From Macrostomum lignano (lineage: Eukaryota): a stretch of 64,000 bases of DNA. The notes below the pieces were generated by a model. It did no database searches, had not been told where the DNA came from, and was given only the letters and a program-made list of their open reading frames with translations. The number at the start of each line of letters is the position of its first letter. Position 1 is the first letter of the stretch. The translations under genes were made by a program, and so were the position numbers. Shown here piece after piece: positions 2,970 to 48,017 of this stretch. The DNA is taken from NCBI GenBank assembly GCA_002269645.1, contig NIVC01000452.1, positions 124,001 through 188,000 on the forward strand, read 5' to 3'.

Positions 2970-3872
2970 GCTGGACTGGGCGTCACGTCAGGGACACTGG
3001 ACTGGGGTCAGGGACACTTGACTGGACATCAAGGACACTGGACTAGGCGCCAAAGACACTAAACTGGGCTTCAGGCAGGGACACTACTAGAATCATAAGG
3101 ACACTAAACTGGGCTTCAGACAGGGACACTACTAGAATCATCAGGACACTAAACTGGGCTTCAGACAGGGACACTACTAGAATCATCAGGACACTAAACT
3201 GGGCTTCAGACAGGGACACTACTAGAATCATCAGGACACTAAACTGGGCTTCAGACAGGGACACTACTAGAATCATAAGGACACTAAACTGGGCTTCAGA
3301 CAGGGACACTACTAGAATCATCAGGACACTAAACTGGGCTTCAGGCAGGGACACTACTAGAATCATCAGGACACTAAACTGGGCTTCAGGCAGGGACACT
3401 ACTAGAATCATAAGGACACTAAACTGGGCTTCAGACAGGGACACTGCTAGAATCATCAGGACACTAAACTGGGCTTCAGACAGGGACACTACTAGAATCA
3501 TCAGGACACTAAACTGGGCTTCAGACAGGGACACTACTAGAATCATCAGGACACTAAACTGGGCTTTAGACAGGGACACTACTAGAATCATCAGGATACT
3601 AAACTGGGCTTCAGACAGGGACACTACTAGAATCATCAGGACACAAAGCTGGGCTTCAGACAGGGACACTACTAGAATCATCAGGACACAAAGCTGGGCT
3701 TCAGACAGGGACACTACTAGAATCATCAGGACACTAAACTGGGCTTCAGACAGGGACACTACTAGAATCATCAGGACACTAAAAAAGCAGCAAGCCTGGT
3801 TAGACGGCAGCGGAAATGAATACCCGAAGAGCACGAAAAAGCCATAGAACTCCAGCAGCATGCTCAGTATAG
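2970..3872 (-). pseudogene. Duplicated fragment of GOT1 (3' part of exon 3 plus intron 3)
   Basis: Aligns in direct orientation with ~8590-8802. Minus strand reads [15 protein letters not shown] followed by GTATTC, versus [15 protein letters not shown]|GTATTC in the intact gene. No matching exon 4 or 5 found to the left. Confidence 0.8.
3055..3782. repeat. 45-bp tandem minisatellite, ~16 copies
   Basis: Unit ggacactaaactgggcttcagacagggacactactagaatcatca. It accounts for the 15-aa-periodic ORF 3043..3861. Confidence 0.97.
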
Positions 3873-4258
3873 ACTACGCAACTGCCGTCTAAAAGCATGG
3901 ATGAATGAATAGAATGGATTGCTATTCTGGCTCTGACTATTTTCGTTTTTGACTCTTTTGCATCCGGTTCCCCCCCGTGCCTTTTCATTGGTTGATGATT
4001 GCCATAGACAATTGTCAGTTACTTGCAGAGAATATCGAGCGCTCGTAGGTCTTCCCCCTTTATTTCAAAACACGAGCGAAAGCGCTTGTGCATCGAAAGA
4101 AAGGGGCGAAGGCCGAAAATTGTTTGACGCACGAGTTTGCGTGTAGGAAAATCATTGTCTTTTGACCATAGACAAAGTCATTCCTGCACGGTTTTCGAGA
4201 AACGTTAAGAAGAGATGAAAATTGAGTGGAGAGTTTATAGAAAAGTGTATAAAGCTTA

Positions 4259-5062
4259 TTGACTATGGCGTCTGTAATCGACTCGGCTCTGAATCCTCCA
4301 TTAATTGATTTTCGCTACGCTACGGTGTCTGGATTAAGTGGCGACGAAATGTTTATTGAAAGTGTGTCCAGCAACTTTGAGAGGACGGGCGACGATTTGA
4401 CTGCACTGATAGCGGATTGCACGTTCAGCGAGGAATTAGAGAAACTTTTCAGCTCGGATCCGGAAACCTTGTGTAACCTTGACGAATTGGAAAGTCTGGC
4501 CGCTCAACTGGAACGCGACAACGAATGTCATTCGACTGTCTCTAAGGAGAAAGCTGTGATCAACCGCTTGACGGCCTGGTTGGCGGAGAATAATTTAAAA
4601 GTGGATTACGCGACTGCTTCGGTGGAAGAAATTGCCAAATGGGTCCGCTACTTCTATGCGACTCTGCGTAAGTCAGACGGCAGCTTCTATTCGCCGAATA
4701 CAATCGTAGGATATCGAGCCGCACTGATCAGGTACTTTATGAGAGGCAAGAAGAGGGACTCGATCATGGCAGGGATGAGTGATCAGCTGACAGTCGCTCT
4801 AGCTGGAACTATGCCGGCACCAAGTTCTACATTGAGCGAAGCTCCTGCAAGGGCTGTTACAACTACCGACCCGTGCGCCCTGAACGACGCTCCTACAAGG
4901 GCTGTTGCGACTACCGACCCGTGCGGATCAGCGTCAATGTCAACTGTCAAGAAGTCACTGGTTGTTGAAGAATCGACCACCACACTTGTAGCAGCCCCCA
5001 CTAAGCGGATGAAGATTTTGGCAAACGGCAAAACGAATGTTGTGCAGTTTATTTTCGAGTAA
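4259..5062 (+). CDS. Crypton-type tyrosine-recombinase-derived protein, 267 aa, catalytic domain absent
   Basis: Motif WVRYFYATLRKSDGSFYSPNTIVGYRAALIRYF matches the RKxDGxxYxPxTxxxYxAAxxRY segment found upstream of DUF3504 in Crypton recombinases and their ZMYM/QRICH1/KCTD1 derivatives. No R-H-R-Y catalytic region follows. Basic patch PTKRMK near the C-terminus. Confidence 0.72.
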   Translation: MTMASVIDSALNPPLIDFRYATVSGLSGDEMFIESVSSNFERTGDDLTALIADCTFSEELEKLFSSDPETLCNLDELESLAAQLERDNECHSTVSKEKAVINRLTAWLAENNLKVDYATASVEEIAKWVRYFYATLRKSDGSFYSPNTIVGYRAALIRYFMRGKKRDSIMAGMSDQLTVALAGTMPAPSSTLSEAPARAVTTTDPCALNDAPTRAVATTDPCGSASMSTVKKSLVVEESTTTLVAAPTKRMKILANGKTNVVQFIFE

Positions 5063-5577
5063 ATGCCGAGAGGGGTGTGAGTAGGTCTATAGACTCATTA
5101 ACTGTTTCCCTAGTTCCACTTATTATCCTTTTTGTTCTTCCATATTGTTATTGATTACATATTCAGTTGCTTCTAAAAATAAATTGTTAAATCGTGCAGG
5201 AGTTTGACGAATTCCATTGTCGGATGATTCATCGTGCAGGAATGCACAAAACCGTGCAGGAATGCATTTCTGCGCCTAATGCTTTTTCAGTGAGATTTTA
5301 CCATAGACATCCATTCCATTGTCGTTTGACCACAGCGTGCAGGAATGATTTTTTCGATTTATTATCGTGCAGGAATGTCTGTGTCTATGGTAGAAATCAC
5401 TTGACATACGTTAGCTTATCGTGCAGGAATGACTTCATTCCTGCACGATTTAACAATTTATTTTTAGAAGCAACTGAATATGTAATCAATAACAATATGG
5501 AAGAACAAAAAGGATAATAAGTGGAACTAGGGAAACAGTTAATGAGTCTATAGACCTACTCACACCCCTCTCGGCAT

Positions 5578-6381
5578 TTACTCGAAAATAAACTGCACAA
5601 CATTCGTTTTGCCGTTTGCCAAAATCTTCATCCGCTTAGTGGGGGCTGCTACAAGTGTGGTGGTCGATTCTTCAACAACCAGTGACTTCTTGACAGTTGA
5701 CATTGACGCTGATCCGCACGGGTCGGTAGTCGCAACAGCCCTTGTAGGAGCGTCGTTCAGGGCGCACGGGTCGGTAGTTGTAACAGCCCTTGCAGGAGCT
5801 TCGCTCAATGTAGAACTTGGTGCCGGCATAGTTCCAGCTAGAGCGACTGTCAGCTGATCACTCATCCCTGCCATGATCGAGTCCCTCTTCTTGCCTCTCA
5901 TAAAGTACCTGATCAGTGCGGCTCGATATCCTACGATTGTATTCGGCGAATAGAAGCTGCCGTCTGACTTACGCAGAGTCGCATAGAAGTAGCGGACCCA
6001 TTTGGCAATTTCTTCCACCGAAGCAGTCGCGTAATCCACTTTTAAATTATTCTCCGCCAACCAGGCCGTCAAGCGGTTGATCACAGCTTTCTCCTTAGAG
6101 ACAGTCGAATGACATTCGTTGTCGCGTTCCAGTTGAGCGGCCAGACTTTCCAATTCGTCAAGGTTACACAAGGTTTCCGGATCCGAGCTGAAAAGTTTCT
6201 CTAATTCCTCGCTGAACGTGCAATCCGCTATCAGTGCAGTCAAATCGTCGCCCGTCCTCTCAAAGTTGCTGGACACACTTTCAATAAACATTTCGTCGCC
6301 ACTTAATCCAGACACCGTAGCGTAGCGAAAATCAATTAATGGAGGATTCAGAGCCGAGTCGATTACAGACGCCATAGTCAA
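5578..6381 (-). CDS. Identical inverted copy of the Crypton-derived 267-aa ORF
   Basis: Same translation as 4259..5062, convergent with it. Confidence 0.72.
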   Translation of the reverse strand: MTMASVIDSALNPPLIDFRYATVSGLSGDEMFIESVSSNFERTGDDLTALIADCTFSEELEKLFSSDPETLCNLDELESLAAQLERDNECHSTVSKEKAVINRLTAWLAENNLKVDYATASVEEIAKWVRYFYATLRKSDGSFYSPNTIVGYRAALIRYFMRGKKRDSIMAGMSDQLTVALAGTMPAPSSTLSEAPARAVTTTDPCALNDAPTRAVATTDPCGSASMSTVKKSLVVEESTTTLVAAPTKRMKILANGKTNVVQFIFE

Positions 6382-8109
6382 TAAGCTTTATACACTTTTC
6401 TATAAACTCTCCACTCAATTTTCATCTCTTCTTAACGTTTCTCGAAAACCGTGCAGGAATGACTTTGTCTATGGTCAAAAGACAATGATTTTCCTACACG
6501 CAAACTCGTGCGTCTATGGCAAAATGCACTCGTGCGCTTCGCGCACTCGTGCTTTTGCCATTGACGCACTCGTTTTCGTGCAGGAATATTACAATGAAAA
6601 GGCACGGGGGGAACTGGATGCAAAAGAGTCAAAAACGAAAATAGCCAGAGCCAGAATAGCAATCCATTCTATTCATTCATCCATGTCTAAAAGCAGTTCA
6701 CTATTGCTCAAAAATCAATTTCATAGTAAAACTGTCAATCCCAACAGATGTTTGAAGGTTTTCTATTTGCTTTCGAGCTTATGCAGCAGAAAAAATGCAA
6801 CTAATCTTATCGGTCCAATGTATTTTTGTCTAGCTGTCAAGAACATAACCCGGCTCTCGCCTTGTTGCAAAGCATTCTACTAAAGTTGAAACATCCGTTT
6901 AGAAAACGAAAACATTACAATTTTTCCTATTTAAAGTAGTATTTCTTGAAATTTAAGTCTGACTTAAAAAAATCTCTGCATACCGCACGAGTCAAAGCAG
7001 TTTGTTATAAAAGGTTAAACAGCTGGGGGAACGTAAAGCCCAACACCGAAATCGCAGTACTGGCAATGATTAGAGAGCACGTCAGCTCAGCTTACCTTAA
7101 TAAACAGCGTCATTTTAAATATTATAACTATAGCTGTATAAGCTAGAAGCTACCAGGAATTGCCTTTCTCGAGATCCTGCAATTTAGAAGTTGGTGGCAA
7201 ACACATTTGCAGAAATCCTTGCAAGACGGTCTCAGGCGTTAATTGATGTTGAAAATCGGTGATACCAGTGTTCGATACGAGAACATTTAATCTTAAATTA
7301 AACTTCGGTCCAGCATATAGATTTTTTCATTATATTTTTCATCATAAGCAGAGCACTGAAAATTTTCAAATTCTGTCTAGAATTAACACTGTAAGTAGGG
7401 AAGGCAGACAAATGATTTACAAAGCAATTTACGCTAAAAAACAGGTAACTTCTTTCGCGCATTGTTGTAAACTATGAATTTATATGATATCAGTTTACGA
7501 GTCAATTAATCAGGTAAAAACTGGCGTAGCAGAGACACTGCTACAGACTACAGAATAGGACTAGCAGAGAAATCAGTTATTATAGTATATTATTATTATG
7601 TTTATGTTGGCACCAGAGCTTACTTTGGTTAATTCTACAACTGTATACTAGCCCATCGACTTTATACAATGCACAAAATCTCCATCGGCCAAGGTACTTC
7701 TGGATGTCTAAATTGGAGGCACGCCAACTTTTTCGCACATTTTGACTACCAATGACAATTCACTAGGCCAGATGCCGTTAGCAGTGCTCCACTTTGAAGA
7801 GTAGTAGGGGCCATATATCAGTTATCCTAGCGCTTGTCAATCCCGAATAGTTAATAAAGTCTTCAATTAATAATATATGTGGAGAAATGTTGTCCACCCG
7901 CACCTGCTGCAGGTCTTCACCGAATCACTGCTTCATATGACAGTAGAAGACTAGCCCATAAATATCGCGACATCGTCCCTCAAAAACGCAAAATTTTTAT
8001 ATTAGACGAAAGAAATTGAAATCAAGACAACGATTTGAAATAATGTCAGCCAAAAGAAAACTAGCAAAAGCAAAAAGCAACAAAACACGGAAGCAACAGG
8101 CCAAGCAGC

Positions 8110-11100
8110 TCATACTGGGTTTCTTGCGGTCCGCCACTTGTCCAGCATCTGGAAAAAGATTGGAAATTCGATTGGTAATTCAGTTTTGTTATTTTTTTCT
8201 GACAAGCCAAAATGAATCAAAGAATAACTCATAGGATGCTCTCTAGCCCATAATAAAGATATTACTCTTCTTTGGTTAAATAAAAAAGCAATTACTCACC
8301 GGACCAATAACTGGCACCCGCGACATAAAGTTGAGAACGACAGGAAAGAAGCCGCTGAAAAAAGAAAAACTTTCAGCTGTACTTGCGTCACTGACACTGG
8401 ACTGGCGTCATGGACACTGGAATGGGCGTCAAGGACACTAAACTGGCGTCAGAGACACTGGACTGGCGTCATGGACACTGGAATGGGCGTCAAGGACACT
8501 AAACTGGCGTCAGAGACACTGGACTGGCGTCAGAGACACTGGACTGGGCGTCAGGGACACTGGACTGGGCGTCAGGGACACTAAACTGGCGTCAGGGACA
8601 CTGGACTGGGCGTCAGGGACACTGGACTGGACATCAGGGACACTGGACTAGGTGCCAAGGACACTAAACTGGGCTTCAGGCAGGGACACTACTAAAATCA
8701 TCAGGACACTAAAATGGCAGCAAGCCTGGTTAGATGGCAGCAGAAATGAATACCTGAAGAGCACGAAGAAGCCGTAGAACTCCAGCAGCATGCCCAGTAT
8801 AGGTGAAACAAACAATACAATTAGAATGCCGCCAAAAAAGAAGGCTGTGCCTTTCAGCTTTTCTAGCTTAAAGAAGAAGTGAAATGTGCGCTCCAGACCA
8901 ATTACAAAACAAATGCCAGAGAGGAACAGAACCTGAAATATGTAGTTTGGTTTAAAGAGTAATTTACATCAACAAAACACAGAAATAATTCAAGCAAGCA
9001 TAAAGCACTTAAGCTTGCTCACATTGCCAATTGCAAGCAGCCCACGGTCAAAAAATAGCAGTATGCCCAAGAAGACAAATACTGATCCAAAGCCAGATAG
9101 GCCAATCCCAATCTCTAAAATGTTTAAACAAAGTGATTCGTTTATATTTTTATGTATATTTTATACCTAATTGATTTGAATATTCTATTAATACATAGAA
9201 AAGTTGCATAACATTGACCCTGGCTATTAAATATTTTTGGATTAATATTATAAAAATTATAAATTGGCCTATTTATCGAACCATTTTTAGTCTTAATTGT
9301 TAAATATAAATGAACAAATAAATCATTACTAATTTTAATAGCCTGACAATGCCTGATGCGAGGCAAAACATGTCGCATAAAAAATGATAGTGCTTACCTT
9401 CTTAATTCTACTTTTTCTCAGACACACAACTTTAACATAGTACTATAAAAGTTTATATTAGGATTAAAATTTTAATCAGATAATATTAGACTCTAAATCT
9501 TGACAGAACCTATCTAATTTGTTTATAATAAAACATTTTTTGTTTACTTGCTTTCCTTAGGTCTAAATTAAGGATGCCAAAAAAGGATATTAGCTATTCA
9601 ATATATTAGTCTGAAAATAAAATGAAAATATTAGTCTAAAGAGATTTAGGGAGATAAAGTAAAATAGCATATGTATACATTAATAAAAACCTTTAGTAAG
9701 AAAAATAAATTTGATAAGTAGCCTATACCAATGCAAATATTACAGTAGCATTTGCACAATAGAAAAATAAATAGTTAGAAAACTGTTACTTTTAAATGCT
9801 TAGTAGGAAAACAGCTATTTGATAGTTTTCATAGATTAATTATAATTTATATATTTAATACAAAGAGACTGTTTGTTACAATATAACATAGGGCTTGCTT
9901 CTGTCCTTATAAATAATTCCACAATGCCACCAAAGTTGTCACAGGGATACTCTTCTATTTACTATTATTGAATATCATGTTACCAAGGTTGTAACAGGGG
10001 TTAATTCTTCTTACTGATCTTACTAGTTATTACTTGCCTTTTTACTGGTAGCACATGTACTTCTATTGGTAGCATATGTACTTCTATTGTAGTTTCTAGC
10101 CTGAGGGGTCTTTAGGCACTGTCTATCCTATTTCTATACCCTTCTAAAGATATTTTCTCAGTCCTGGGCATTCTTGGGATCAGAGGGTCACAGCTTACTT
10201 ACTGGGTATTCTGCCCTGAAGTGGGTTTCTCAGACTCTGAGTCTGGACTTCTCTACCCTGTGGTAGGATTCCTATCTTCTAAAGGCAATTTCTCAGATTC
10301 TATATCTGGATTTCTCATTCTTCTGAGAACAGTTTGAACTCTCCCAATTTTGGGGCTTCTTAATGCTTCTACCAAAACAACTAAGTCAGTAAGTATTGAA
10401 TAAGGCTTCAATTTCGAGATACTAAAACAATTTCAAGCTTAAAACAAGCGGCAGACAAGTTGGTTTCCTTCTGGTTCTGCTTGTGTATTTATATCCCTTT
10501 CACAGTTTGGTTTTAAACAAACAAAATTTCATAATATTTATAATATTTACAATATTATTGATATTATACTCATTAAAACAAAAATAGCCTAGTTTTAATT
10601 ACAATACTTTCTAAGAAAACAAGTGATGCTAAATAAGGCCTATCTTAAATATATTATAATATTTTTGGAGTAAATTATTCTTAATCATTACATTAATAAT
10701 TAATAACTAGATTGAATAGATATAGGTGTATATATGCATATATTATATATATCAAAAATAAAATATTTCTAATATTTGCTATATAAGCTACAATTAGATT
10801 TTTAAAAAGGTTTTGAATCAAAAAGGGAACCTTACAATATCAAGATAATACTTTTTTAATAGAAGTTTTCTATCTTGGTACAAAAAGAATAGATCAAGAT
10901 CTATTAGATAATATTATAAACAGATAGGCCTAACATTAAGATTAAGACAGATAAAATTGTTTTATATTATAAACAGATCAAATAATATTATAAAAAAAGA
11001 CAATAACCTGTATTAAATGCAAAAAAGTTTTTAATTATAGAGAAAGCTATTTATTTTTTAGATTAAGATAAAATAGACTAAACTAGATCTAAACTAAGCC

Positions 11101-11573: not shown

Positions 11574-13326
11574 ATTCATGCCACTGATTTATAAAAAAAT
11601 GCCTGTATGATGCTACGATGGCTTTAGATGATAATTAAACTAAACGTAATTAAATTAAACACAATAAAATTTTGTGCCACGTCATCAGCCACGCTTTAAA
11701 ATTATCTGATAAATAAGCGCAAAAAGTGTCGATTTCGAAATGATGCCACAGCTTGTTTAATGTAAAAGTCAAGAATTAAAACAACAGGCAGCAGTATTTT
11801 AGAAACAAATAAAATAGACATGCAAACATATTTATTTTATATTAATATTACTTTTTTTACTCACGCATTGAACAGTTGTAAATATTTTCAATTGATTGTG
11901 CCTGTCAATAGTTAATTCGTTATTAAAAAGGAAGCACAAATTACTTTTTGTATGAAATTTGTATTGTATTGGTATTGATATTTGTAATAGCCAACTGGCT
12001 TAGATTTACGAATAAAGCCAGCGAATTTGCTTTTGTTTCTGAATAGTCTTTTCAAATACTATTTTTATTTTATTTTAAATATCTCGCCTTGGTTATGATT
12101 AGATTATAATTTGCAGGACTAAATCCAGATGTAAATAATATATTGGGATTAAACTAAGGGATCGATTTACATCCCGCGAAGCAAACGTAGTTTAAATGCT
12201 ATTTCAAAACATTGAAGCAATTCGATACTGGGTCGCTGCAGAAAGGCGTATACCTGATTGTGCGTCCTAGTGATTATTTATAAGCCAACGACAATTACAA
12301 GTTTAAAAGCGTGTTCATTTTTACTGCAACTTGCAAGCGACCTTTTGCCAGTCTAGAGTGTTGTAGAGTTTTAGCAATTTTAGCAATTTTATATTTTAGC
12401 AATTATATTTTAGCAACACTATTATTATCGATGCACAATCAGCGGAATGCATACGAAAGGCATAATGGTTACACAAGCTGATATTAGATATATGATGGCA
12501 ATTATAAAAAGCGTAATTAAAACCAATGAGTTATGATTAGTACAGCACTTAGTACAGTAAATGAATATTCAATAATCAATGTTACTAAACAAATGTGCAC
12601 CAGATCGAGCAAGTCAAACAAAAAAGCGGTTGAGTAATTAGCAGACTATAAAAGGCAATCAAAACTTTACAAAAACATTGCTCACAGCTTCGCGGATAAG
12701 TTGATTCCAGCGATAACAATCAAAGTTTGAAAAAAAAACATTTAAACAAATTTTATTGGAATCAAACAATGATTCCAATGTTAACAGTGGAATGTTTTTT
12801 TTCACTTTTATTGCTTGTAAACACTAGGGGAATGCTTTTTGTTGCTAGGAAAAAGCTTCTATTTAGATTAAAACATAGTTAAAAAGTACGGTATTATAGC
12901 ACGTGAAATATATATGGTTGTAACTGTGCGATAAATACCTGTAGTGGCGACGAATTCATAGTAAAAAAATCATAAATAAAACAGGTGAGAGAAACCAAGG
13001 CAGGGAAACAGGCAATTCTTGTTGTAGCACGCGCTGTAGAGAAACAAAAGCGTCAAACAAGGCTGGATTCGTTTTATTATTACAGGTAATGTAAAAAACG
13101 AAGTGACTCAATTTCAAAGAGTGCGCATCCATCAGAATAGTCCGTTAGCTAAACTAACCTTTAAAGCACCTTAGATTCTTAACTTGTATTTGCCCCCTCA
13201 GCCCAATCAGTACACATAACATAGATAAGCATAATATAGAAGACGTAAGAACACAAAACCTTAGAAGTCAGCAAATCCGTGAATCACAAATCACTGAACC
13301 GGACAGACAGAACGATAAGAGACAGT

Positions 13327-25700: not shown

Positions 25701-27251
25701 TCACCTCTCATCCCATCGCCATCCCACCCCATACCCATTCCATTCCTATCCCATCGCCATCCCATCGCCATCTCATCACCATCCCATCACCATCCCATCA
25801 CCATCCCATCGCCATCCCATCACCATCTCATCGCCATCTCATCACCCTCCCATCACCATCCCATCGCTATCCCATCATCATCTCATCGCCATCCCATCAC
25901 CATATTATCGCCATCCCATCATCATCTCATCACTATTCCATCATAACATCGCACCATCCCAACGCCATCCCATCAAGATCCCGTCAATTCCGCATTCACT
26001 CCGCAGCCGCCTGCTGCAGCCGCTGATGCTGGGCGATCGTGTACTGCAACTCGATGACCAGCCCGTTGATCCAGACCGGCTGTCCAACGGTGCAGCTGGC
26101 GAATTGCTGCATCTCACTGTGCGCTGGGATCCGCTGCAATACCATCGAGCCCTGGCGTCTATGACTGCGGCAGCCTCTGTAAGCCGCTGGCACTTGTAGA
26201 TAGTTTTGGACACAGTTGGGAGGATCTTATTTAAAACAGCCACCTAATAAATGCAGAAGCAACGATAATTGAAAGTTTACCCCTATGTGTCAGATAGGAA
26301 GTCGCAGGAGTCTGCAGACTCCGTGTTTACAGATTATTCATATTTGACAATCGGTATAGAATTCCTAAAATCCTATACTTATGGAAAATTTGATACTTAA
26401 AGGAAATATGTGTCAGATAGTTATGTGTATGGCTTGAGCTCCGGGCGGCTGCCGGGAGCCTGCTTGTTGAATTTGTTGAGCTCTTTGGGCGCAGCGGGCT
26501 TCTTGTGGAGACGCAGGTGGGCAACTGCTTCAGCACGGTGCGCCATCTCCGACGACGATTTCTCCGCTGCCTCCAATGCGTCGACTCTGGCCACGAGCGT
26601 CTTGAAGTCGGGCTGTTCGATCTCCAGCAGCTTTGCACGGTGCACGTCACTGCGGAGACCGAAGACAAACTGGTCGCGCAGTCTCTCGTCCAGAGTGCTG
26701 ATGCAGTGGGATACGTCTGACCCGTCCAGAGTGACCTCGAATTTGCAATACTCTGAGGCAGCCTTTAGGCCAGCAATAAAGTCCGCGAGACTCTCGCCGG
26801 GCTTCTGCACGCGCTGTTGAAAGCGGAATCTGGCGGATAACATTGACGTCTTGGGAGAGTAATGTGCCCTCAAGACAGCAGCTAAGTCTGAGTATGACTT
26901 GGAGGTCACCGTTTCCGGCAGGCACAGATTCCGAAGAACCTTGTAAGCGTCTTCTCCGATGGCGGTCACCAGCGTGGCGACCTTCGCCTCGTCTCGGACT
27001 TCTTTACAGATGAAGTATTGTTCGAGCCTCTCTAGGTATACCTCAATGTCAGAGTTTGCAGATGCAGAGAGTTCTGGAATTCTACCAGTTGTAGCCATTT
27101 TCTCGTCGCCAATGTGAAATTATGAGCCGAGTGATTGTAGTTAGAAGTAGAAAAGGAAGGACACGTGAAACTCTCCACGCGCGGTGTTGTATTTATTTAT
27201 ATTGATTTACTGACTCAGCACAGACAGAGATTAGGGGTGGGTGACTGAACA

Positions 27252-27287
<36 letters not shown>

Positions 27288-30200
27288 AATAACCAACTCC
27301 AAACCCCACCGACACTGGGGTGGCAAAAGTGCACTAGAACTAAAAAATAAACAAATAATAATAACTAACTGAGAGACCTAGCCAAGCCATACACATAACT
27401 ATCTGACAACTATCTGACAATATGAATTATAGAAAACTCAAATTAAATGGCATCCATCTGCCAAAAAACAGGATGCCAAAATCAGTGTGGCTAAGTTCAA
27501 TTCAAACCAGCGCCATTGTTGATTAATTGATTTTTGGCTCAAGACACCCAAGGCGCACGTTAACCTACACAATACACCCCGGAAATAAATCATAACTGGC
27601 AATAAATAAATCTTACACTAGCGATTCAACAAATGCTTTGCACCGCCCAACCTCGCAGATCCTGCGCACCATCAGCTGCAGCCCGCCCGCGCATCAGCCG
27701 CCGCCGTCGCAGCTGCCAGTTCGTCAGGTCTCAATGCCAGCCAGCCTGGCAACAACAGCGGAGCGACAGCTAGCAGCGCCTCGGCCGGCGCCAGCGGCAC
27801 TAGCTGACAGGGCTGTCCGGGTTTACCGTCATGACGGCCAGTCTCGGACAGTGCCAGTTGGCCGGGACACTCCCGCCGGCGTGGCGGCCGCTCTAGCCGC
27901 TAGAGAATTCGGCGTTGCCGGGGTAGATTACGCCTGCTGGCAGCTGGTTGAAGTCTGCGCCAGCCTGCCCGGACCGGCGCTGCGTAGGCGAGCTCTGCAA
28001 GACAGCGTCACCGATCTGGACGGTCGACTGCCGGTTGGCGGCCGGTATTATCTGAGACGGGCCGACGAACCCATTGATCAGTGCTTAACTGATAAAACTG
28101 AGGCGCTTCAATTGGCCAGAGAGGCTGCTGTTGACCTGCTGCAGGTGAGCCAATTTATTACATTTACAAATTTACTCTTATTGTGTATTTTGAAAAGAAC
28201 TCTTACTGTGTATTTGGATGTTTATTTTTGCTGTGCATTCGAGAATGTACTTTTACTGTGTACTTGTAAAAATGTACTTTTAATGTTGTTTTGAAATTTA
28301 CGAGCGTACTCTTACTGCGTATTTAAACATATATAATCCATAGAAATAAAGACTTTCCGTGACAATATTTGCGTTCTCCGGGATTTTATTTGGTAATATT
28401 CAATAATATCCCGTAAAGTCTTTATTTCTATAGTTTATACGAGATTACACATGCCTTTTTCGGGAGTTATTTTTTCGAGCCTGAGGCCCGAGGGATTTAT
28501 GAAAATAACTCCCGAAAAAGGCATGTTTAATCTGATACATTTTTAATGTGTTTTTGAAAATGCAATTACTGCGTGCTCAGCTTGCTGTGTACTTTAGAAT
28601 TGTACATGCAGGCTTTCTGCTTTCTCAGAAATTTATTGTGATTTCTATATGTTTTACTTTGGCGGGTATAGATGCTGCAATTGAGCGGCTGTTCTATGGT
28701 GTGTACGGCTGTTGCTGAAACTGTGGAAGTTTGCAACCCCCAAGCTTCTATATATTATGCGTTATACTAACCGCAGTCAACTTGGCTTAACCTGCAGCGT
28801 TGAGGGCAAATCTGTCTGTAAAACTAAAGTACAATTTCACATAAAGTCGAAAAGGTCTCAGTGTATGAACTGCGCAATCTACAGCGTCCTGCAGTGTCAA
28901 CTAAGGGAAACTATAAGGTCATAATACTGGCTCAAACTAACTCTTAATTATCTTTATTAACTCAACTAAACTCAATTTTCTGTTGAAATCGATCCTATTG
29001 CCAGACACTAGGACAGTGCTGTAACCAAACACTAGTTAGTCGGCTTTCAGACTAGTTAAAGTTTTGCTTTCGCACGATTATGACAATAAAATTTGGCATT
29101 TATTGCGAATTCACTGTTGGAATTCAAACCAATAGCTAGTATAAAATATTCTTAGAACGTAGGATGCAACGATTTCACTTCAAAATTTAAACATTAGCCA
29201 AGCAAACTTGGCTAATATTATTGCATTGCAAATGTTTATTTAAAACCTTATTTAAACAAGCTGACCTTTGGCACGTTACGAAACACTGGCATTAGCTAAT
29301 TATCATTTAGCTACTTGTAAAAATATGTTTGTGTCCTCGACTCTTCGTTGAACAAGATAATATTTTTTCCAGTTCTAAAATTCCAAATTGCCTGCATAGC
29401 TGTGGATTCGGTGAAGTGGAATCAGTGCCGTGGATTTAGTGTCGTGTGTTCAGTGCCGTGGAATCAGTGCCGCGGAATCAGTGTCATGGAATCAGTGCCG
29501 TGGAATCAGTGTCGTTGAATCAGTGTCGTGGAATCAGTGCCGTGGAATCAGTGTCGTGGAATCAGTGTCGTTGAATCAGTGTCGTGGAATCAGTGCCGTG
29601 GAATCAGTGTCATGGAATCAGTGCCGTGGAATCAGTGTCGTTGAATCAGTGTCGTGGAATCAGTGCCGTGGAATCAGTGTCGTGTAATCAGTGCCGTGGA
29701 ATCAGTGCCGTATAATCAGTACCGTATAATCAGTGCCGTGGAATCAGTGCCGTGGAATCAGTGTCGTGGAATCAGTGCCGTGGAATCAGTGTCGTGGAAT
29801 CAGTGTCGTGGAATCAGTGCCGTGGAATCAGTGCCGTGGAATCAGTGTCGTGGAATCAGTGCCGTGGAATCAGTGCCGTGGAATCAGTGTCGTGGAATCA
29901 GTGCCGTGGAATCAGTGCCGTGGAATCAGTGTCGTTGAATCAGTGCCGTTGAATCAGTGTCGTTGAATCAGTGTCGTGGAATCAGTGCCGTGGAATCAGT
30001 GCCGTGGAATCAGTGTCGTTGAATCAGTGTCGTGGAATCAGTGCCGTGGAATCAGTGTCGTGGAATCAGTGCCGTATAATCAGTGCCGTGGAATCAGTAT
30101 CGTTGAATCAGTGTCATGGAAGCAGTGCCGTGGATTCAGTGTTGTTGAATCAGTGTTGTTGAATCAGCGCCGTGGATTCGGTGTCATGGAATCTGTGTCG

Positions 30201-32388
30201 TGGATTCAGTATCGTTGAATCAGTGTCATGGAAGCAGTGCCGTGGATTCAGTGTTGTTGAATCAGCGCCGTGGATTCGGTGTCGTTGAATCAGTGTCGTG
30301 GAATCAGTGCCGTGGAATCAGTGCCGTGGAATCAGTGTCGTGGAATCAGTGCCGTGGAATCAGTGCCGTGGAATCAGTGCCGTGGAATCAGTGTCATGGA
30401 ATCAGTGCCGTGGAATCAGTGTCGTTGAATCAGTGTCGTGGAATCAGTGCCGTGGAATCAGTGCCGTGGAATCAGTGTCGTGGAATCAGTGCCGTTGAAT
30501 CAGTGTCGTGGAATCAGTGCCGTGGAATCAGTGCCGTGGAATCAGTGCCGTGGAATCAGTGTCGTGGAATCAGTGCCGTGGAATCAGTGCCGTGGAATCA
30601 GTGTCGTGGAATCAGTGCCGTGGAATCAGTGCCGTGGAATCAGTGTCGTTGAATCAGTGCCGTTGAATCAGTGTCGTTGAATCAGTGTCGTGGAATCAGT
30701 GCCGTGGAATCAGTGCCGTGGAATCAGTGTCGTTGAATCAGTGTCGTGGAATCAGTGCCGTGGAATCAGTGTCGTGGAATCAGTGCCGTATAATCAGTGC
30801 CGTGGAATCAGTATCGTTGAATCAGTGTCATGGAAGCAGTGCCGTGGATTCAGTGTTGTTGAATCAGTGTTGTTGAATCAGCGCCGTGGATTCGGTGTCA
30901 TGGAATCTGTGTCGTGGATTCAGTATCGTTGAATCAGTGTCATGGAAGCAGTGCCGTGGATTCAGTGTTGTTGAATCAGCGCCGTGGATTCGGTGTCGTT
31001 GAATCAGTGTCGTGGAAGCAGTGCCGTGGATTCAGTGCCGTTGAATCAGTATTGTTGAATCAGCGCCGTGGATTCAGTGTCGTTGAATCAGCGCCAAACA
31101 GGTGTTTGATCGAGCACAGACAATATAAAAGATTCCAAGCTTGTCTTTACATTCGAAACAGAATATAGTAACTACTACCGAATACACTTTTTTATTTGCT
31201 TTATTAACTTTCTATTATACTAACAAAAGGCCGAAAATGCATTAAAAGCCAATAGACGGTGTTTTTATGAGTAGAGCGAGAATAGAGAATGGAGTGCCAG
31301 TTTTACAGAGACTAGGGGAAATTATTCCCATTGCAATAATTTTATTGGAGGAAAAGAGATCAATTGGAAAATTGCTATTTTTTCATCCCTCCAACCCCCA
31401 GCTCGATCCTCGCCGCCTCGCCCAGCTGCTCACCGAGTCCGACGCGGAGGCGCACCGGCAAATCCGTCCCGCAGACCTGGTGCTGTGGTGGCTCGGCAAC
31501 CGCGATGGCAGCAGCTACAAATCCTTGACCGCTTTTCGTCGGCTAATCCGGCTGGCCGAGGCCACGTCCGGCTGGCCGGGGCGCGAACTCGCGACCTGCG
31601 GCGGTGCCAACATCGAAGCCAGCGAGCAGCGCCGTCGCGACCGGATTCTGAAGCGCCTGGTCCGCGTAGCCCTGGAGTGCCACCGGTTGCGGAACCTGTG
31701 CTCTGCCACCAGCCTGGCCCTCGGCCTGGCCGCCTGTCAGCCTGCCGGCTGGGAGCGCCGACTGCCCCGGCCGCTGCGGACCGCTTGGCAGGACCGGCTG
31801 GCCAGCCTGGCCGACGTGTCCATGAACCACGCTGGCTACCGAATGCAGCTGCTGGAGGCTGCCGGCCCGGCCACTGTGCCGCACCCGGCCGTGCTCTGCA
31901 AAGATCTGACGTCGCTTCGGGAGGCCGGCGGCAAGTCCGACAGCGGGCTGGTCAATTTCTATCGACTGCGCCTGGTGGCCAATCTGGCGCGCTCCTTCTG
32001 CCGACAGCGACTGCCGCCGCCTCTGCCGACTCCGCCGGCTTTGTCTACGCCGACTCCTCCGCCGACGCCTACGTCGATAGAGGAGCGACTTCCATCAGTG
32101 ACGACGGCTCAGCAGCAGCAGGGCGTCGCAGACTCCAGCAAGTCTTCTTCGTCGGCGTCTTCGATTGCTTCGTCGAACTCGTCCGGTGTGTCCGTCAGCT
32201 CCCCGGTGCGCGAGGCCCGCCGTCTAGCCAGTCGGCTCCTGCTGATTGGCCGGCCGAGCCCGCCTGGTTGCGGCGGCGGCGGTGGCGTCGGCTTACGACG
32301 TCGGCAGTTGCTGTGCGATGAGTCGCTAGCTGAGAAGCGACTTTCAGCTTATGTGCAGCGAATGGTGCATCCCAATGGCATTGTTTAA
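22706..32388 (+). CDS. RAPGEF2: PDZ-GEF (RAPGEF2/6-like Rap guanine-nucleotide exchange factor), copy 1
   Basis: Exons 23000-23078, 23815-23907, 24220-24792 (cNMP-like), 25103-25647 (REM, PDZ start), 26007-26178 (PDZ end), 27659-28144 (RA), 31402-32388 (RasGEF; KDLT and LVNF..LR motifs) splice in frame. The domain order cNMP-REM-PDZ-RA-GEF is diagnostic. An upstream exon starting near 22706 and the start codon are uncertain. Confidence 0.88.
23300..23486. repeat. 42-bp minisatellite, ~4 copies (RapGEF intron); copy 2 at 50485-50671
   Basis: Unit ggagtc(a/g)ggactgcagttaatagagaccctatttgtgtcagg. Confidence 0.9.
24069..24177. repeat. 22-bp minisatellite, 5 copies (RapGEF intron); copy 2 at 51254-51362
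   Basis: Unit cccctctactgatcaagaatcg. Confidence 0.92.
24826..24964. repeat. 30-bp minisatellite, ~4.5 copies (RapGEF intron)
   Basis: Unit ctcagtcattaaccgccaccctcccagatt; longer in copy 2. Confidence 0.92.
25690..25975. repeat. Low-complexity CATCC/CATCGC/CATCAC array (RapGEF intron); longer in copy 2 at 53118-53479
   Basis: Degenerate catcccatcgc/catcac units. They generate the spurious H/P/I/S-rich ORFs. Confidence 0.88.
26411..27419 (-). mobile_element. Truncated Ty3/Gypsy (Mag-like) LTR retrotransposon: 5'LTR + PBS + partial gag + inverted LTR tip, 5-bp TSD
   Basis: Absent from copy 2, where the empty site ggaaatatgaattatag lies near 53907. TSD atatg at 26406-26410 and 27420-27424. 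LTR 27419-27113 runs TG...CA with AATAAA and a (CT)n tract. PBS tggcgacgag (27111-27102) is complementary to the tRNA-Ser(GCU) 3' end. Confidence 0.92.
26421..27098 (-). CDS. gag: Gypsy Gag, C-terminally truncated, 225 aa
   Basis: YLERLEQYF, RFRFQQRVQKPGESLADFIAGLK and LRDQFVFGL are typical Mag/Gypsy gag motifs. The ATG directly follows the PBS. The frame ends in the inverted LTR tip before any zinc knuckle or protease. Confidence 0.9.
   Translation of the reverse strand: MATTGRIPELSASANSDIEVYLERLEQYFICKEVRDEAKVATLVTAIGEDAYKVLRNLCLPETVTSKSYSDLAAVLRAHYSPKTSMLSARFRFQQRVQKPGESLADFIAGLKAASEYCKFEVTLDGSDVSHCISTLDERLRDQFVFGLRSDVHRAKLLEIEQPDFKTLVARVDALEAAEKSSSEMAHRAEAVAHLRLHKKPAAPKELNKFNKQAPGSRPELKPYT
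28331..28538. mobile_element. ~208-bp double-hairpin insertion present only in copy 1
   Basis: Absent at ~54815. Hairpin 1: tagaaataaagacttt/aaagtctttatttcta. Hairpin 2: gattacacatgcctttttcgggagttatttt/aaaataactcccgaaaaaggcatgtttaatc. Possible TA/ATA duplication. Confidence 0.7.
29404..31095. repeat. 14-bp satellite, ~120 units, with a 714-bp higher-order duplication
   Basis: Unit ggaatcagtg(c/t)cgt. Variant blocks recur at offset 714 (29971/30685, 29976/30690, 30200/30914). Confidence 0.96.
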
Positions 32389-42139: not shown

Positions 42140-44646
42140 CTGGTTGGTTTGGATACGAGTCTTGGTTTACAACAGTTATAAATGACTATAATATTTAGCC
42201 ATAAATAAAGAGTTTTCTCTATTTAGGCATGTGATTGATTTCAGAAAAAGCTCAACCGATCCTCATGAAACAGGCACCATTCAATTGGAAAATTTTCTAG
42301 CAATGGTACATGTGATGTGGCTAAGAAATTGCTCAATGCTAAAGGGATTAAATACTTGAAAAATATGCTTTTAGCAAAGGTCAAGCATACTTTTTGACTT
42401 GAAATGAATTTTAAATAGTATATTTTAATATAGCACAATCAGGACACAGTTGGCAGCTATTCTCCTTTTGGCTAAGACCTAGAAAAGTTCAAGGCAAGAC
42501 AAAGTGTATTTTAGCCAAAATATATAGGCCTGCCCTCTCTGCCCTCCCCTTGTATCTTCACCTCTAGAATCTGCCTTTTTTAATAAATCTTTTGCTGCAA
42601 AGCAAAAACAAATTAAGTTGCTTTCAGCTGTCATGATGAGCTACTCAGATATATGGGCTTATGGTATCAGTTTGATCAATAGTTCCCTAGTCTCAGCTCC
42701 TTGGACTGGCTAGCCATGGTTAACAGGTTAAAAAGAATCCAAAAGTTAATATTCAAGACTTTTCCTGCTTTGTGGAACTTGGAAGAATAACAGTGAACAA
42801 AATTTCAAATAAGGAATTGCACTTTTGAAGTGTTTCTGCTGCTTGGCTTCCCTATGCGCCCTTTCTAAAGAAAACAAGCTTATAGGCTTTTTAACAAGGG
42901 CATAGAAAGCTTTTGCTACAAGTATAAGATGAAAGATAAGACATGGGTATACCTAAACAGCTTTGGTATAAACAAGGGCATAGCTAGGAATTTTTTAGGG
43001 TGTTGATTTTTACTCCTAGGTTCTGAACTTCTGCTTAGAAAGTTAAATACACTATCAATTTTCACTTTTTGCATAAATATTCTATGCCAAACTGCACCAG
43101 CATGGTAGACTGTGCCTGTATTGCTAGGGGCCAATCTATGCTAGATACTATCTACAATAAGGGCCATTTGCTGCAATAGGGTCATCAACCATATTTAGCA
43201 ACTGCAATAAAATTTGAGAAGCTACTTTGTAGTATGTAAGAAGTCTTGATAAAGATAGCTTAAAAATAATTGTTTAACAACTTATTGACCAATACTAAGC
43301 TAGAATCAGCTATCCTATAGAATGTTTGTTAAATTAATTTTTGCTTGATTCAACCCCAACAAGTGAACAAACTAACAATTAATATATGCTAGCAACTAAA
43401 TTGTTTGTTATATCTCTGTAGGTGGCACAATCCAACTTAAAACTACTAGTTGACTAGCCATCTAGAGAAAAATATTCTAAAATAAAAAAAGTAAACGATA
43501 GCTTGAGTTGAATACCAGTATTAGCAGCTTAGTAGCTAATTTTTCAATTTCAAATACATCTCTTTTTAAAGGTCCCCTTTTATTATCACAGCCTTTTGAC
43601 CATAGACATGTTTTCATGCTTTATACATGCAAAACTGATATTATTTCAAGAATTCCTAATATATCAATGCAAAAATTCTAATTGAATAGAGATATATTGT
43701 AGATAAAATTACCTAGTCATATTATTACTTTATGGTAAAGTAGTAGGAGCCTAACCTTATATTTAATTATGGCAATTGACTATAACAAATAATTTATTTA
43801 TTAGTACATGATAAACTGTTACTTTGTTTACTTTTTTATATTTTTAGACTTTAAAAAGGAAAAGAATCAAATTCAAGCAAAAAGTTAATGATTATTGAAT
43901 GCTTCTATAAGATCTAAAAAGCCAACTGTGTAGTCTCCCTTAATACAATCAGTGTTGGGCACCATTAGTAAAAATCTTAACTTCCATTAATGGCAAGAGC
44001 ATTAATGTTAAAAAAATATTAACTTATCAACTTTTAACTTCATTAAGTTAACTGAAAGTTAACTGATAATTGTTAATTTTAATTTGTTAAAGTTAACACA
44101 AAAATATAGAAACCTTGCACATTTTTATAATACACTGTCTTTGCTTTCCCCTTTTTAGCAAAACATAGAGGTCATCTAAGGGATTTACAAGCTAAAAAGT
44201 AATAAATAATAATTTAAAAAAACTTGTTTATATAATACTACTAAATTAAGCATATATGATATAATTAAAGTAGTAACTTTTTTATTTGAAACTCATTTGA
44301 AAACTCATCTATAATGTTGCAACTTTTTTAAACTTATATTTTTGTTTTTTCTTTGCATCTTTGGTCATTGACATTTCCATTAGGCCTAACATTAATGATG
44401 AATTTGTTATTAACTCACAGAGTTATTAATGCAAATTTGTTAGTAAATTTGTTTAAAAATCTTAATGGTAGTCCATTAACATTAGGCCCTAATGAAAAAT
44501 CTTAACACTTATTAATGCTTATTAGGCCCTATAGTGACCATAAGGGCATAAGGCATAAGGAAAATTTTGAACAAAAAATAAACTTCTACTAGACGTACTT
44601 CTATTTGCTCGACTATATTGCTCTGCATACAAATGTTAATACTTAC

Positions 44647-44757
44647 AGTTATGATAATGCAGCCAACAAAAGTGCCCATTCGATTATCAAAGCAAAAACA
44701 CTTTTTTAATGGTAAAATAGGCTCTACATCATCTCTCTTCCGTAGTTTCCAGCCCAT
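44647..44757 (-). CDS. Orphaned duplicate of LAPTM-like exon 1 (37 codons)
   Basis: Same peptide MGWKLRKRDDVEPILPLKKCFCFDNRMGTFVGCIIIT with an intact ATG and ACT|GTAAGT donor. Its own downstream exons were not duplicated. Confidence 0.85.
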
Positions 44758-47478: not shown

Positions 47479-47755
47479 GCGGAGCAGCTTAGTGGAAAAT
47501 ACATGTACATCCGACTTTCATGCCGCGACCCCTGGTTCGATTCCATGCGCGGCCGCAGTCATTTGGAGCTTGTGTGTACGAAATTTGGCCAGGGGTTGTC
47601 GTGCGATTCACAGCCATGAGGGCCGACCCCCATGGCACAGAGAGTGTACATGCCTGACGATTAGACAGTCAGGACCGCTGTACACCCTGTGTGAGCGGGT
47701 GTGTGTAAGTGCTGTGTCTGCGTACAGTATTGGCGCGCTTGTATTGTGCTCAGGA
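47479..47755 (+). mobile_element. tRNA-derived SINE-like element, copy 2; minus-strand partner at 49287-49439
   Basis: Duplicate of 20055-20330 and 22083-22238. Confidence 0.58.
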
Positions 47756-47934
47756 GCCAGCGGAATGGGTGGAACTTTTGAGCGCTGGCTTTGGGACGGG
47801 ACGCTTTCACTAGGCCGAAATTTCACTTCGCCGAAATGACTAGCACGCTCTTTCATGAGGCCGAAACTTCAGTGGGCCGAAAAATCATTTTAGCAGCATC
47901 CTTACTATGCTCAAAAATGGATGTAAACTTGGAC

Positions 47935-48016: not shown

Positions 48017-48017
<1 letters not shown>

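What the first reader, a model, noticed from the sequence alone, without database searches (positions are those of the whole stretch)
3888..6693. Foldback transposon carrying two convergent copies of a Crypton-recombinase-derived gene
Seen: an 8-bp TSD (tctaaaag), ~95-bp TIRs starting CATGG, and inside them an apparently perfect 1076-bp inverted repeat whose arms each hold the same 267-aa ORF, tail to tail across a 237-bp spacer. The TIRs differ at 3 positions while the inner arms look identical, so the inner palindrome is younger or actively homogenised. Established: TIRs plus an 8-bp TSD indicate DDE cut-and-paste mobilisation (hAT/P/Merlin-like), whereas Cryptons use a tyrosine recombinase. 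Inference: a hybrid element in which a DDE-mobilised shell carries Crypton cargo. Read-through of either ORF into the other arm would give ~1 kb of hairpin dsRNA, so it could be a mobile siRNA/piRNA source against Cryptons.
Basis: partly seen in the sequence, partly recalled or inferred. Interest (0 to 1): 0.85.

Follow-up and report, generated by a model that had tools for sequence, protein, structure and literature searches.

The report
Defective Crypton copies nested in a TIR element
The palindrome is two back-to-back copies of a crippled Crypton jumping gene from a young flatworm (Macrostomum lignano) family, sitting inside a small older transposon shell: most likely an ordinary nested insertion, not a new hybrid transposon.

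Summary

The ORF is the tyrosine recombinase (YR) gene of a young, multi-copy CryptonA-type family of Macrostomum lignano, with 799 bp deleted. The deletion removes the whole catalytic domain.

Seven independent insertions define the family:
- Full-length elements are about 2.07 kb and 98.9–99.6% identical.
- Their ends are TAATATTCCTGCACG…GTCAAACGACAATG.
- They insert after A-N-T-G, with no TIRs and no TSD.

None of the nine other M. lignano loci fetched carries the CATGG TIR.

The right copy (5317–6591, minus strand) is a complete 1,275-bp non-autonomous Crypton with both canonical ends. It sits after CATTG at the inner edge of the right TIR, so it arrived by Crypton-type insertion.

The left copy (4126–5201) is a partial sister copy. 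It shares the deletion and 5 private substitutions, shows 0/1,076 differences, and is flanked by a GTTTGAC direct repeat.

Best reading: Cryptons nested in a TIR/TSD-bounded MITE-like shell. A "DDE shell carrying Crypton cargo" moving as one unit, and a hairpin-RNA role, are neither supported nor excluded.

New member of a known kind; modest interest.

The parts
3888..3895 (.). Left copy of the 8-bp direct repeat tctaaaag (target-site duplication of the shell)
   Evidence: Read directly; identical 8-mer at 6686-6693.
3896..3990 (+). Left terminal inverted repeat of the shell (95 nt, starts CATGGATGAATG, ends CATTG)
   Evidence: 92 identical positions with the right TIR. No tandem sub-repeats. 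Absent from the nine other M. lignano loci fetched.
3991..4125 (.). 135 bp of unassigned interior, probably native interior of the shell. Contains one CCATAGAC module.
   Evidence: No significant match to any Crypton copy or to the rest of the window. The alignment to Crypton 5' regions is poor.
4122..4128 (+). GTTTGAC, left copy of a 7-bp direct repeat flanking the partial copy L. The last 3 nt overlap Crypton homology.
   Evidence: printout. The second copy is at 5202-5208.
4126..5201 (+). Copy L: partial non-autonomous Crypton. It lacks the 5'-most 77 bp and the 3'-most 122 bp of the unit. This is the left arm of the perfect inverted repeat.
   Evidence: blastn: 4126-4742 matches L002 9862-10478 and 4741-5201 matches L002 11276-11736, at about 99%. 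0/1,076 differences from copy R.
4265..5062 (+). ORF of copy L: 265 aa, equal to recombinase residues 1-160 fused in frame to residues 402-506. No catalytic domain.
   Evidence: The deletion junction is at 4741/4742 with GA microhomology. AATAAA lies at 5178-5183.
5202..5208 (+). GTTTGAC, right copy of the 7-bp direct repeat
5209..5316 (+). Crypton-end-like fragment carrying 2 CGTGCAGGAATG motifs, CCATTGTC and CCATAGAC. On the minus strand it ends in ...CCGACAATG at 5215.
   Evidence: 5209-5317 is 100% identical to L004 5730-5838. Motif map.
5317..6591 (-). Copy R: complete 1,275-bp non-autonomous Crypton. Its 5' end TAATATTCCTGCACG is at 6591 and its 3' end GTCAAACGACAATG is at 5317. It is inserted after CATTG at the inner end of the right TIR. 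Positions 5439-6514 form the right arm of the inverted repeat.
   Evidence: Canonical termini and target, as in six other independent insertions. 98.97-99.49% identical to full-length copies, apart from the 799-bp deletion.
5418..5449 (.). Palindromic pair of the 12-nt motif (ATCGTGCAGGAATGA-CT-TCATTCCTGCACGAT) in the 3' UTR of copy R. The inner breakpoint of copy L lies inside the equivalent site.
   Evidence: I14. The same site is present in every full-length copy.
5578..6375 (-). ORF of copy R, identical to the ORF of copy L
6592..6685 (-). Right terminal inverted repeat of the shell (94 nt)
6686..6693 (.). Right copy of the 8-bp direct repeat tctaaaag

Best explanation
The locus is a nest of transposons, not a single hybrid element.

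(a) Inferred. A small MITE-like element with 95-bp TIRs inserted here and made the 8-bp duplication tctaaaag. That is the footprint of a DDE cut-and-paste transposase supplied in trans. The superfamily is undetermined (hAT- or P-like).

(b) Shown by comparison with other copies. A 1,275-bp non-autonomous member of a young Macrostomum lignano CryptonA-type family (copy R) inserted at the inner edge of the right TIR. It has the family's own footprint: the element's 5' end follows a host A-N-T-G, the element itself ends in AATG, and there are no TIRs and no TSD. That footprint fits tyrosine-recombinase crossover between a circle junction GACAATG|TAATATT and a short matching target.

(c) Inferred. 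A 1,076-bp piece of the same copy was then duplicated locally in inverted orientation, 116 bp from copy R's 3' end (copy L). This probably happened by template switching or repair synthesis, and it left a GTTTGAC direct repeat. It created the perfect palindrome.

Both copies carry the same 799-bp deletion. Each encodes only most of the Cre-like N-terminal DNA-binding domain plus the conserved C-terminal tail, and cannot catalyse recombination. Copy R keeps both ends and all the repeated CATTCCTGCACG / CCATAGAC / GACAATG modules, so the full-length recombinase of sister elements should be able to mobilise it in trans.
For: Identity of the ORF:
- Residues 1-160 are 98% identical to M. lignano A0A1I8HZM1.
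- The whole ORF equals the 506-aa P0003 minus residues 161-401.
- P0003 scores above Pfam's cut-offs: DUF3504 39.4 bits against 29.7, and Phage_integrase 33.2 against 27.1.
- The P0003 model matches Cre/Tre best, at E 8e-9 over about 350 columns.
- The conserved RGREW, HC[VI]R, GHK and RY motifs all lie in the deleted part.

Family:
- The 90% cluster has 14 members, and gene names run up to Mlig005367g20.
- Full-length copies were fetched from 8 loci. They are 98.85-99.64% identical to each other.

Termini and target:
- Seven independent junction pairs read flank-A[A/T/C]TG|TAATATTCCTGCACG...GTCAAACGACAATG|flank, window copy R included.
- L010 has a head-to-tail junction GACAATG|TAATATTCC.
- None of the nine other loci fetched contains the CATGG TIR.

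Deletion: 799 bp with GA microhomology, covering 241 codons plus a 76-bp intron.

Sister status of L and R:
- 0/1,076 differences.
- They share the deletion and 5 substitutions found in no other sampled copy. Other pairs of copies differ by 0.4-1.1%.
- GTTTGAC flanks copy L.

Motif: the 12-nt motif occurs 9 times in the window, always inside the element, against 0.15 expected. It is also conserved upstream of a recombinase gene only 47% identical, in L001.
Against: - No second copy of the shell and no empty site could be found, so its status as an independent MITE rests only on the TIR + TSD.
- The TIR homology ends exactly at the CATTG where copy R begins. I estimate about a 1-in-14 coincidence if insertion hit a random ANTG in a shell of about 435 bp. 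This could instead mean both TIR inner ends were Crypton targets.
- The order of events for L and R, and the origin of 5209-5316 and 3991-4125, are unresolved.
- The GTTTGAC repeat is only 4 nt long once the 3 nt of Crypton homology are discounted.
- All comparators come from one assembly (GCA_002269645.1), and L004 and L005 are the same insertion.
Confidence: 0.6

Rival explanations
1. The TIR element and its Crypton content form one hybrid non-autonomous transposon. A DDE transposase mobilises it as a unit, and the Crypton material is captured cargo.
For: - TIRs and the 8-bp TSD enclose everything.
- The interior is almost wholly Crypton-derived, including mosaic pieces without canonical ends: copy L and 5209-5316. 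These resemble filler DNA captured during gap repair.
- A composite Crypton/Mariner element, MarCry-1_FO, is known (PMC3212892).
Against: - Copy R has both canonical Crypton termini and the canonical ANTG target, as expected for in-situ Crypton insertion rather than capture.
- No DDE transposase ORF lies inside.
- There is no other TIR copy in the window or in about 145 kb of other M. lignano DNA, including 8 Crypton loci.
- The two Crypton copies are younger than the sampled family diversity.
Confidence: 0.2
2. Two independent Crypton insertions into the two symmetric CATTG targets at the inner ends of the TIRs of a palindromic MITE. Each would be oriented by its target, which explains the tail-to-tail arrangement. 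Later rearrangement would have damaged the left copy.
For: - TIR homology ends at CATTG on both sides.
- The family inserts after A-N-T-G in a fixed orientation.
- In L002 a copy also sits inside one arm of a 162-bp inverted repeat.
Against: - Copy L does not start with TAATATTCCTGCACG. 135 unrelated bp separate it from the TIR.
- Its 3' end is truncated inside the palindromic motif pair.
- 0/1,076 differences plus 5 shared private substitutions point to a direct sister relationship.
Confidence: 0.1
3. Assembly or read artefact: a fold-back chimera in long-read data created the second arm.
For: Perfect identity of the arms. The source assembly is from a very repeat-rich genome.
Against: - The palindrome is internal. 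Its 237-bp spacer is unique sequence, with different unique sequence outside each arm.
- One arm is part of a complete canonical element, and the other is bounded by a direct repeat.
- The whole structure is bracketed by matching TIRs and a TSD.
Confidence: 0.05
4. The 95-bp inverted repeats plus the 8-bp repeat are the Crypton's own loxP/FRT-like recombination site, and no DDE enzyme is involved.
For: Joined ends would give inverted repeats around an 8-bp core, the classic tyrosine-recombinase site layout. I raised this idea.
Against: Seven canonical insertions of the same family have no such TIR and no 8-bp repeat. The Crypton ends lie inside the TIRs.
Confidence: 0.03

Closest known systems
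CryptonA DNA transposons and their non-autonomous derivatives, e.g. CryptonA-1N1_OL and CryptonI-1N1_RPro (Kojima & Jurka 2011, PMC3212892)
   Same: - A single-gene element of about 2 kb encoding a DUF3504-type tyrosine recombinase.
- Multi-copy, with no TIRs and no TSD.
- Internally deleted derivatives keep both ends of the autonomous element.
   Different: - The host phylum, Platyhelminthes, is not among the six animal phyla listed in that paper.
- A 4-bp A-N-T-G/AATG junction repeat and a head-to-tail junction are visible here. That paper found no terminal repeats in animal Cryptons.
- The derivative keeps an open in-frame ORF.
MarCry-1_FO of Fusarium oxysporum: a Crypton fused with a Mariner-type transposon, with 16-bp TIRs and a TA TSD (PMC3212892)
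   Same: Crypton sequence enclosed by the TIRs and TSD of a DDE-type element.
   Different: - MarCry carries its own DDE transposase and an intact recombinase, and exists as several >97% identical copies that moved as a unit.
- Here there is no transposase, the recombinase is defective, only one copy is known, and the Crypton has its own canonical insertion junction inside the shell.
hAT- or P-type MITEs (8-bp TSD). From general knowledge, not tested against a repeat library.
   Same: 8-bp TSD and TIRs. The TIR start CATGGATGAAT resembles Ac (CAGGGATGAAA) and the P element (CATGATGAAAT).
   Different: - 95-bp TIRs are long for hAT or P elements.
- No transposase partner and no second copy were identified.
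- The TIR resemblance is recalled from memory and may be chance.
Foldback (FB-type) transposons
   Same: Large inverted repeats inside a mobile element.
   Different: - FB arms are terminal and built of tandem sub-repeats.
- Here the big palindrome is internal and made of two transposon copies, and the TIRs have no sub-repeats.
Cre/loxP-type tyrosine recombinases
   Same: - The full-length protein's model superposes on both Cre domains.
- The Arg, His-x-x-Arg, His and Tyr motifs are conserved across the family.
   Different: - About 15% sequence identity.
- An extra N-terminal 70 aa and a C-terminal tail of about 100 aa.
- The recombination site has not been defined experimentally.

Membership tests
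Crypton (CryptonA group) | Encodes a tyrosine recombinase with the conserved Arg / His-x-x-Arg / His(Trp) / Tyr residues | tested here: met
   Met for the full-length sister copies. The RGREW, HC[VI]R, GHK and RY motifs are conserved across the full-length relatives that reach each motif. Pfam Phage_integrase scores 33.2 bits against a cut-off of 27.1. The model matches Cre at E 8e-9. The two window copies have lost this region and are non-autonomous.
Crypton (CryptonA group) | Recombinase of the DUF3504 type. Per PMC3212892, DIRS and Ngaro recombinases do not match DUF3504. | tested here: met
   P0003 scores 39.4 bits on DUF3504 against a cut-off of 29.7. The closest solved structure by sequence is QRICH1, 9hjt.
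Crypton (CryptonA group) | DNA transposon with no reverse transcriptase: one gene in a short unit | tested here: met
   The 2,057-2,074-bp unit bounded by conserved ends holds only the recombinase gene, which has one 76-bp intron.
Crypton (CryptonA group) | No TIRs or long terminal repeats. At most short direct repeats that reflect crossover with the target. | tested here: met
   Seven junction pairs show A-N-T-G before the 5' end and AATG as the 3' end, with no TIR and no TSD.
Crypton (CryptonA group) | Moves through an excised circular intermediate | not testable with these tools
   Only a suggestive head-to-tail junction, GACAATG|TAATATTCC, in L010.
Non-autonomous Crypton derivative | Both termini identical to the autonomous element, with an internal deletion of the recombinase | tested here: met
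   Copy R (5317-6591) has both canonical ends and is 99% identical to full-length copies apart from the 799-bp deletion. Copy L fails this test because both its ends are missing.
DDE cut-and-paste TIR element (hAT/P-like MITE): the shell | Terminal inverted repeats plus a fixed-length target-site duplication | tested here: met
   95/94-nt TIRs and the 8-bp tctaaaag on both sides.
DDE cut-and-paste TIR element (hAT/P-like MITE): the shell | Several copies with different TSDs, and an autonomous partner encoding a DDE transposase | tested here: inconclusive
   No other copy in the window, in about 145 kb of other M. lignano DNA, in JGI metagenomes, or among proteins translated across the TIR. The M. 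lignano genome itself could not be searched by DNA.
Foldback (FB) transposon | Long terminal inverted repeats made of tandem sub-repeats that form the element's ends | tested here: not met
   TRF finds no tandem repeat in 3896-3990 or 6592-6685. The 1,076-bp arms are internal and are Crypton copies.
MarCry-type composite (Crypton + DDE transposase) | A DDE transposase gene inside the same TIR-bounded unit | tested here: not met
   Of the 12 ORFs of at least 50 aa overlapping 3800-6800, the only ones with a recognisable product are the two deleted recombinase ORFs.

The most novel reading that the evidence does not exclude
The composite moves as a unit using a DDE transposase. Through convergent read-through of its two Crypton copies it produces a hairpin RNA of about 1 kb that feeds the siRNA/piRNA pathway against the active Crypton family, making it a mobile anti-Crypton trap. 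Alternatively or in addition, the in-frame truncated protein (N-terminal DNA-binding domain plus conserved C-terminal tail, no catalytic domain) acts as a trans-dominant inhibitor of the full-length recombinase at the CATTCCTGCACG motifs.
Probability: 0.08. Interest if true: 0.7.

Novelty: new member of a known kind. Interest (0 to 1): 0.33.

Why it matters
The hybrid-transposon reading would have been striking, but the evidence points to ordinary nesting.

What is useful is the by-product: a young, apparently intact CryptonA-type family in Macrostomum lignano, a flatworm in which transgenesis works.
- At least seven 506-aa ORFs were seen among the family's annotated proteins, and the element copies compared are 98.9–99.6% identical.
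- The ends are exactly defined, with a 4-bp A-N-T-G junction rule and a head-to-tail junction.
- Arrays of a conserved 12-nt motif are present, and so is a natural non-autonomous derivative.

Kojima & Jurka (2011) found no terminal repeats in animal Cryptons. I did not find any experimental test of how animal Cryptons transpose, although I did not search for one specifically. This family offers concrete substrates for such a test.

The perfect 1-kb palindrome is also a potential fragile site and a possible source of hairpin RNA.

Tried and rejected
1. Reading the TIR + 8-bp repeat as a loxP/FRT-like recombinase site of the Crypton itself. Rejected: canonical copies lack both.
2. Treating 3991-4125 as a diverged Crypton 5' end. 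The alignment is poor, so it stays unassigned.
3. Looking for an empty paralogous site. The left-flank paralogue at 8717-8802 ends 16 bp before the TSD.
4. Searching for other TIR copies. All were negative: the window and the loci, JGI metagenomes, and a protein search with the TIR translated in its open frame.
5. A metagenome scan for the conserved Crypton upstream motif gave 0 hits, even though L001 contains it. That collection evidently lacks the contig.
6. Exact-product look-ups of the window ORF (265 and 267 aa) and of P0001 found nothing on record.
7. Linking copy L's inner breakpoint to a predicted recombinase cleavage position in the palindromic motif pair. The breakpoint is inside the site but does not fit a simple cleavage rule, so it stays as an observation.
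8. Pfam on the window ORF alone gave only sub-threshold hits, Ish1 and QRICH1. Family assignment needed the full-length relatives.
Full report
**Observation**

- tctaaaag occurs at 3888-3895 and again at 6686-6693.
- Inside those repeats lie inverted repeats of 95 and 94 nt, at 3896-3990 and 6592-6685. They start CATGG and differ by two substitutions and one 1-nt indel.
- Further in, 4126-5201 and 5439-6514 are 1,076 nt long and 100% complementary, with 237 nt between them.
- Each arm holds the same ORF, tail to tail. It is 267 aa from a TTG start, or 265 aa from the first ATG.
- The first 27 nt of the TIR occur nowhere else in the window.

**Origin of the window and the ORF**

The ORF's first 160 residues are 98% identical to a Macrostomum lignano protein annotated as DUF3504-containing. 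A second search found the full-length form, P0003 (506 aa, BOX15_Mlig005367g7).

The window ORF corresponds to P0003 residues 1-160 fused in frame to residues 402-506, with a handful of substitutions. At DNA level this is a 799-bp deletion with GA microhomology. It removes 241 codons and the gene's 76-bp intron.

P0003 is a tyrosine recombinase:
- It exceeds Pfam's curated cut-offs for DUF3504 (39.4 against 29.7 bits) and Phage_integrase (33.2 against 27.1).
- Its relatives conserve the RGREW, HC[VI]R, GHK and RY motifs.
- An AlphaFold model has mean pLDDT 65.7, with most of residues 90-400 above 70. It superposes best on Cre/Tre over about 350 columns (E 8e-9, TM 0.63 on the Cre length).

All catalytic motifs lie in the deleted segment. 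The window protein keeps the predicted helices up to residue 162, which is most of the Cre-like N-terminal domain. It also keeps the C-terminal tail, whose last 20 residues or so (K-x-M-K-I-x-A-N-G-x-T-N-V-x-x-F-x-F-E) are recognisably conserved in the 54%-identical M. lignano paralogue P0004 and, more loosely, in the ENA-derived relative P0008.

**The family**

The 90%-identity cluster of P0003 has 14 members, and gene names run to Mlig005367g20. I fetched eight loci from assembly GCA_002269645.1. L004 and L005 are the same insertion. Copies are 98.85-99.64% identical to each other and 98.97-99.49% identical to the window copy.

Comparing flanks defines the unit precisely:

host …A[A/T/C]TG | TAATATTCCTGCACGAAAACGAG … CTGTGGTCAAACGACAATG | host

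- It is 2,057-2,074 bp long.
- It has no TIRs and no TSD.
- Its own last four bases, AATG, mimic the four host bases before its 5' end.
- L010 contains a head-to-tail junction GACAATG|TAATATTCC, which is what a circle or tandem junction would look like.

Both end regions carry repeated modules (CATTCCTGCACG, CCATAGAC, GACAATG) and a palindromic motif pair in the 3' UTR. The 12-nt motif occurs 9 times in the window, always inside the element, against 0.15 expected. The module CCATAGACAAA[A/G]TCATTCCTGCACGGTTTT also lies upstream of a recombinase gene only 47% identical, on a JGI metagenome contig (L001). Diverged versions flank the 54%-identical paralogue in L003. I infer that these modules are functional parts of the element, most likely recombinase-binding sites.

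This matches the published description of animal Cryptons: a single DUF3504-type recombinase gene, no terminal repeats, and non-autonomous derivatives that retain both ends (PMC3212892).

**Anatomy of the window element**

- *Copy R.* On the minus strand, 6591→5317 is a complete deleted unit of 1,275 bp with both canonical ends. Its 5' end follows …CTTTTCATTG, the innermost five bases of the right TIR, and its 3' end is …GTCAAACGACAATG. It therefore carries the family's own insertion signature.
- *Copy L.* On the plus strand, 4126-5201 is the same sequence without the first 77 bp and the last 122 bp of the unit. It is flanked by GTTTGAC at 4122-4128 and 5202-5208. Three of these seven bases overlap Crypton homology.
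- *The spacer fragment.* Between the copies, 5209-5317 is 100% identical to a module in the variant 5' region of the L004 copy. Read on the minus strand it looks like another Crypton 3' end, ending in …CCGACAATG.
- *The unassigned interior.* 3991-4125 matches nothing.
- *The shell.* None of the nine other M. lignano loci fetched contains the CATGG TIR.

**Relationship of the two copies**

They share the deletion and five substitutions absent from all seven other copies compared, and they differ at 0 of 1,076 positions. Other pairs in the family differ by 0.4-1.1%. The two are therefore direct sisters. I favour a local inverted duplication of part of copy R, but I cannot exclude two insertions from one very recent source.

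**Interpretation**

The simplest history has three steps.
1. A MITE-like TIR element inserted with an 8-bp TSD.
2. A canonical Crypton-type insertion placed the non-autonomous copy R at an ANTG at the inner edge of the right TIR.
3. A partial inverted copy L was created next to it.

Step 2 is shown by comparison with the other copies. Steps 1 and 3 are inferred.

The "DDE shell carrying Crypton cargo" idea is partly right as a description of the anatomy, but nothing supports it as a functional hybrid. The nearest precedent is MarCry-1_FO, which carries its own transposase and exists as several copies. This element has neither.

The fold-back artefact reading is unlikely. The palindrome is internal and asymmetric, and each of its junctions has a biological signature.

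I also considered reading the TIRs plus the 8-bp repeat as a loxP-like Crypton site. I dropped it.

**What could not be done**

The M. lignano genome could not be searched by DNA. The copy number of the shell, the existence of an empty site, and the abundance of the deleted derivative therefore remain open. Indirect attempts found nothing. Small-RNA and read-through claims were not testable.

**Verdict**

This is a new member of a known kind: a flatworm CryptonA family with a non-autonomous derivative, nested in a TIR element. Its interest is modest. The main value is a well-defined, young animal Crypton family in an experimentally tractable species.

Noticed in passing
window 16975-38120 and 44529-64000: A tandem segmental duplication of about 21 kb, mostly 97-99% identical. 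Each copy carries an ORF with a RasGEF domain (31267-32388 and 57087-58208; Pfam 52 bits) and many minisatellites.
   Followed up: partly
window 26410-27419: A stretch of about 1 kb present only in the first copy of the duplication. It holds a 225-aa ORF on the minus strand (26421-27098) with weak, just sub-threshold retrotransposon gag / PNMA similarity, so it is probably a retroelement fragment.
   Followed up: no
L010 6860/6861 (NIVC01001186.1): The 3' end of a full-length Crypton is joined directly to a Crypton 5' end (GACAATG|TAATATTCCTGCACGG…). This is a head-to-tail junction, as expected from a circle junction or a tandem insertion.
   Followed up: partly
L002 9701-12437 (NIVC01001476.1): This Crypton copy sits inside the left arm of a 162-bp-arm inverted repeat. 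The right arm (12276-12437) is the uninterrupted sequence, a paralogous empty site that differs by a 4-bp indel at the junction. The target (AAACAGACAATG) resembles the element's own 3' end (AAACGACAATG).
   Followed up: partly
L004 5491-5888 (= L005 4830-5227): The 5' region of this copy is a mosaic of stacked and inverted Crypton end modules. Breakpoints lie at CATTG/CAATG sites, e.g. …GGAAAATCATTG|ATATATTCCTGCACG and …CCGACAATG|TCTTTTGACC. This suggests Cryptons recombine with or insert into each other at these sites.
   Followed up: partly
L001 338-371 (JGI metagenome 3300040801): The upstream module CCATAGACAAAATCATTCCTGCACGGTTTT is conserved next to a recombinase gene only 47% identical to the M. 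lignano one. The gene also shows an intron-like GT…AG insert that the called ORF reads through.
   Followed up: partly
window 3055-3783 and 8385-8680; also 3787-3872 vs 8717-8802: The element lies about 100 bp downstream of a 45-bp × 16 minisatellite. An 86-bp piece of its left flank recurs at 93% identity 4.9 kb away, next to a related 21-bp minisatellite.
   Followed up: partly
P0003 residues about 487-506 (window ORF residues about 246-265): The C-terminal motif K-x-M-K-I-x-A-N-G-x-T-N-V-x-x-F-x-F-E is recognisably conserved in P0004 (54% identical) and, more loosely, in the ENA-derived relative P0008. It is modelled as a β-hairpin, though at low confidence. The deleted protein retains it. 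Its function is unknown.
   Followed up: no
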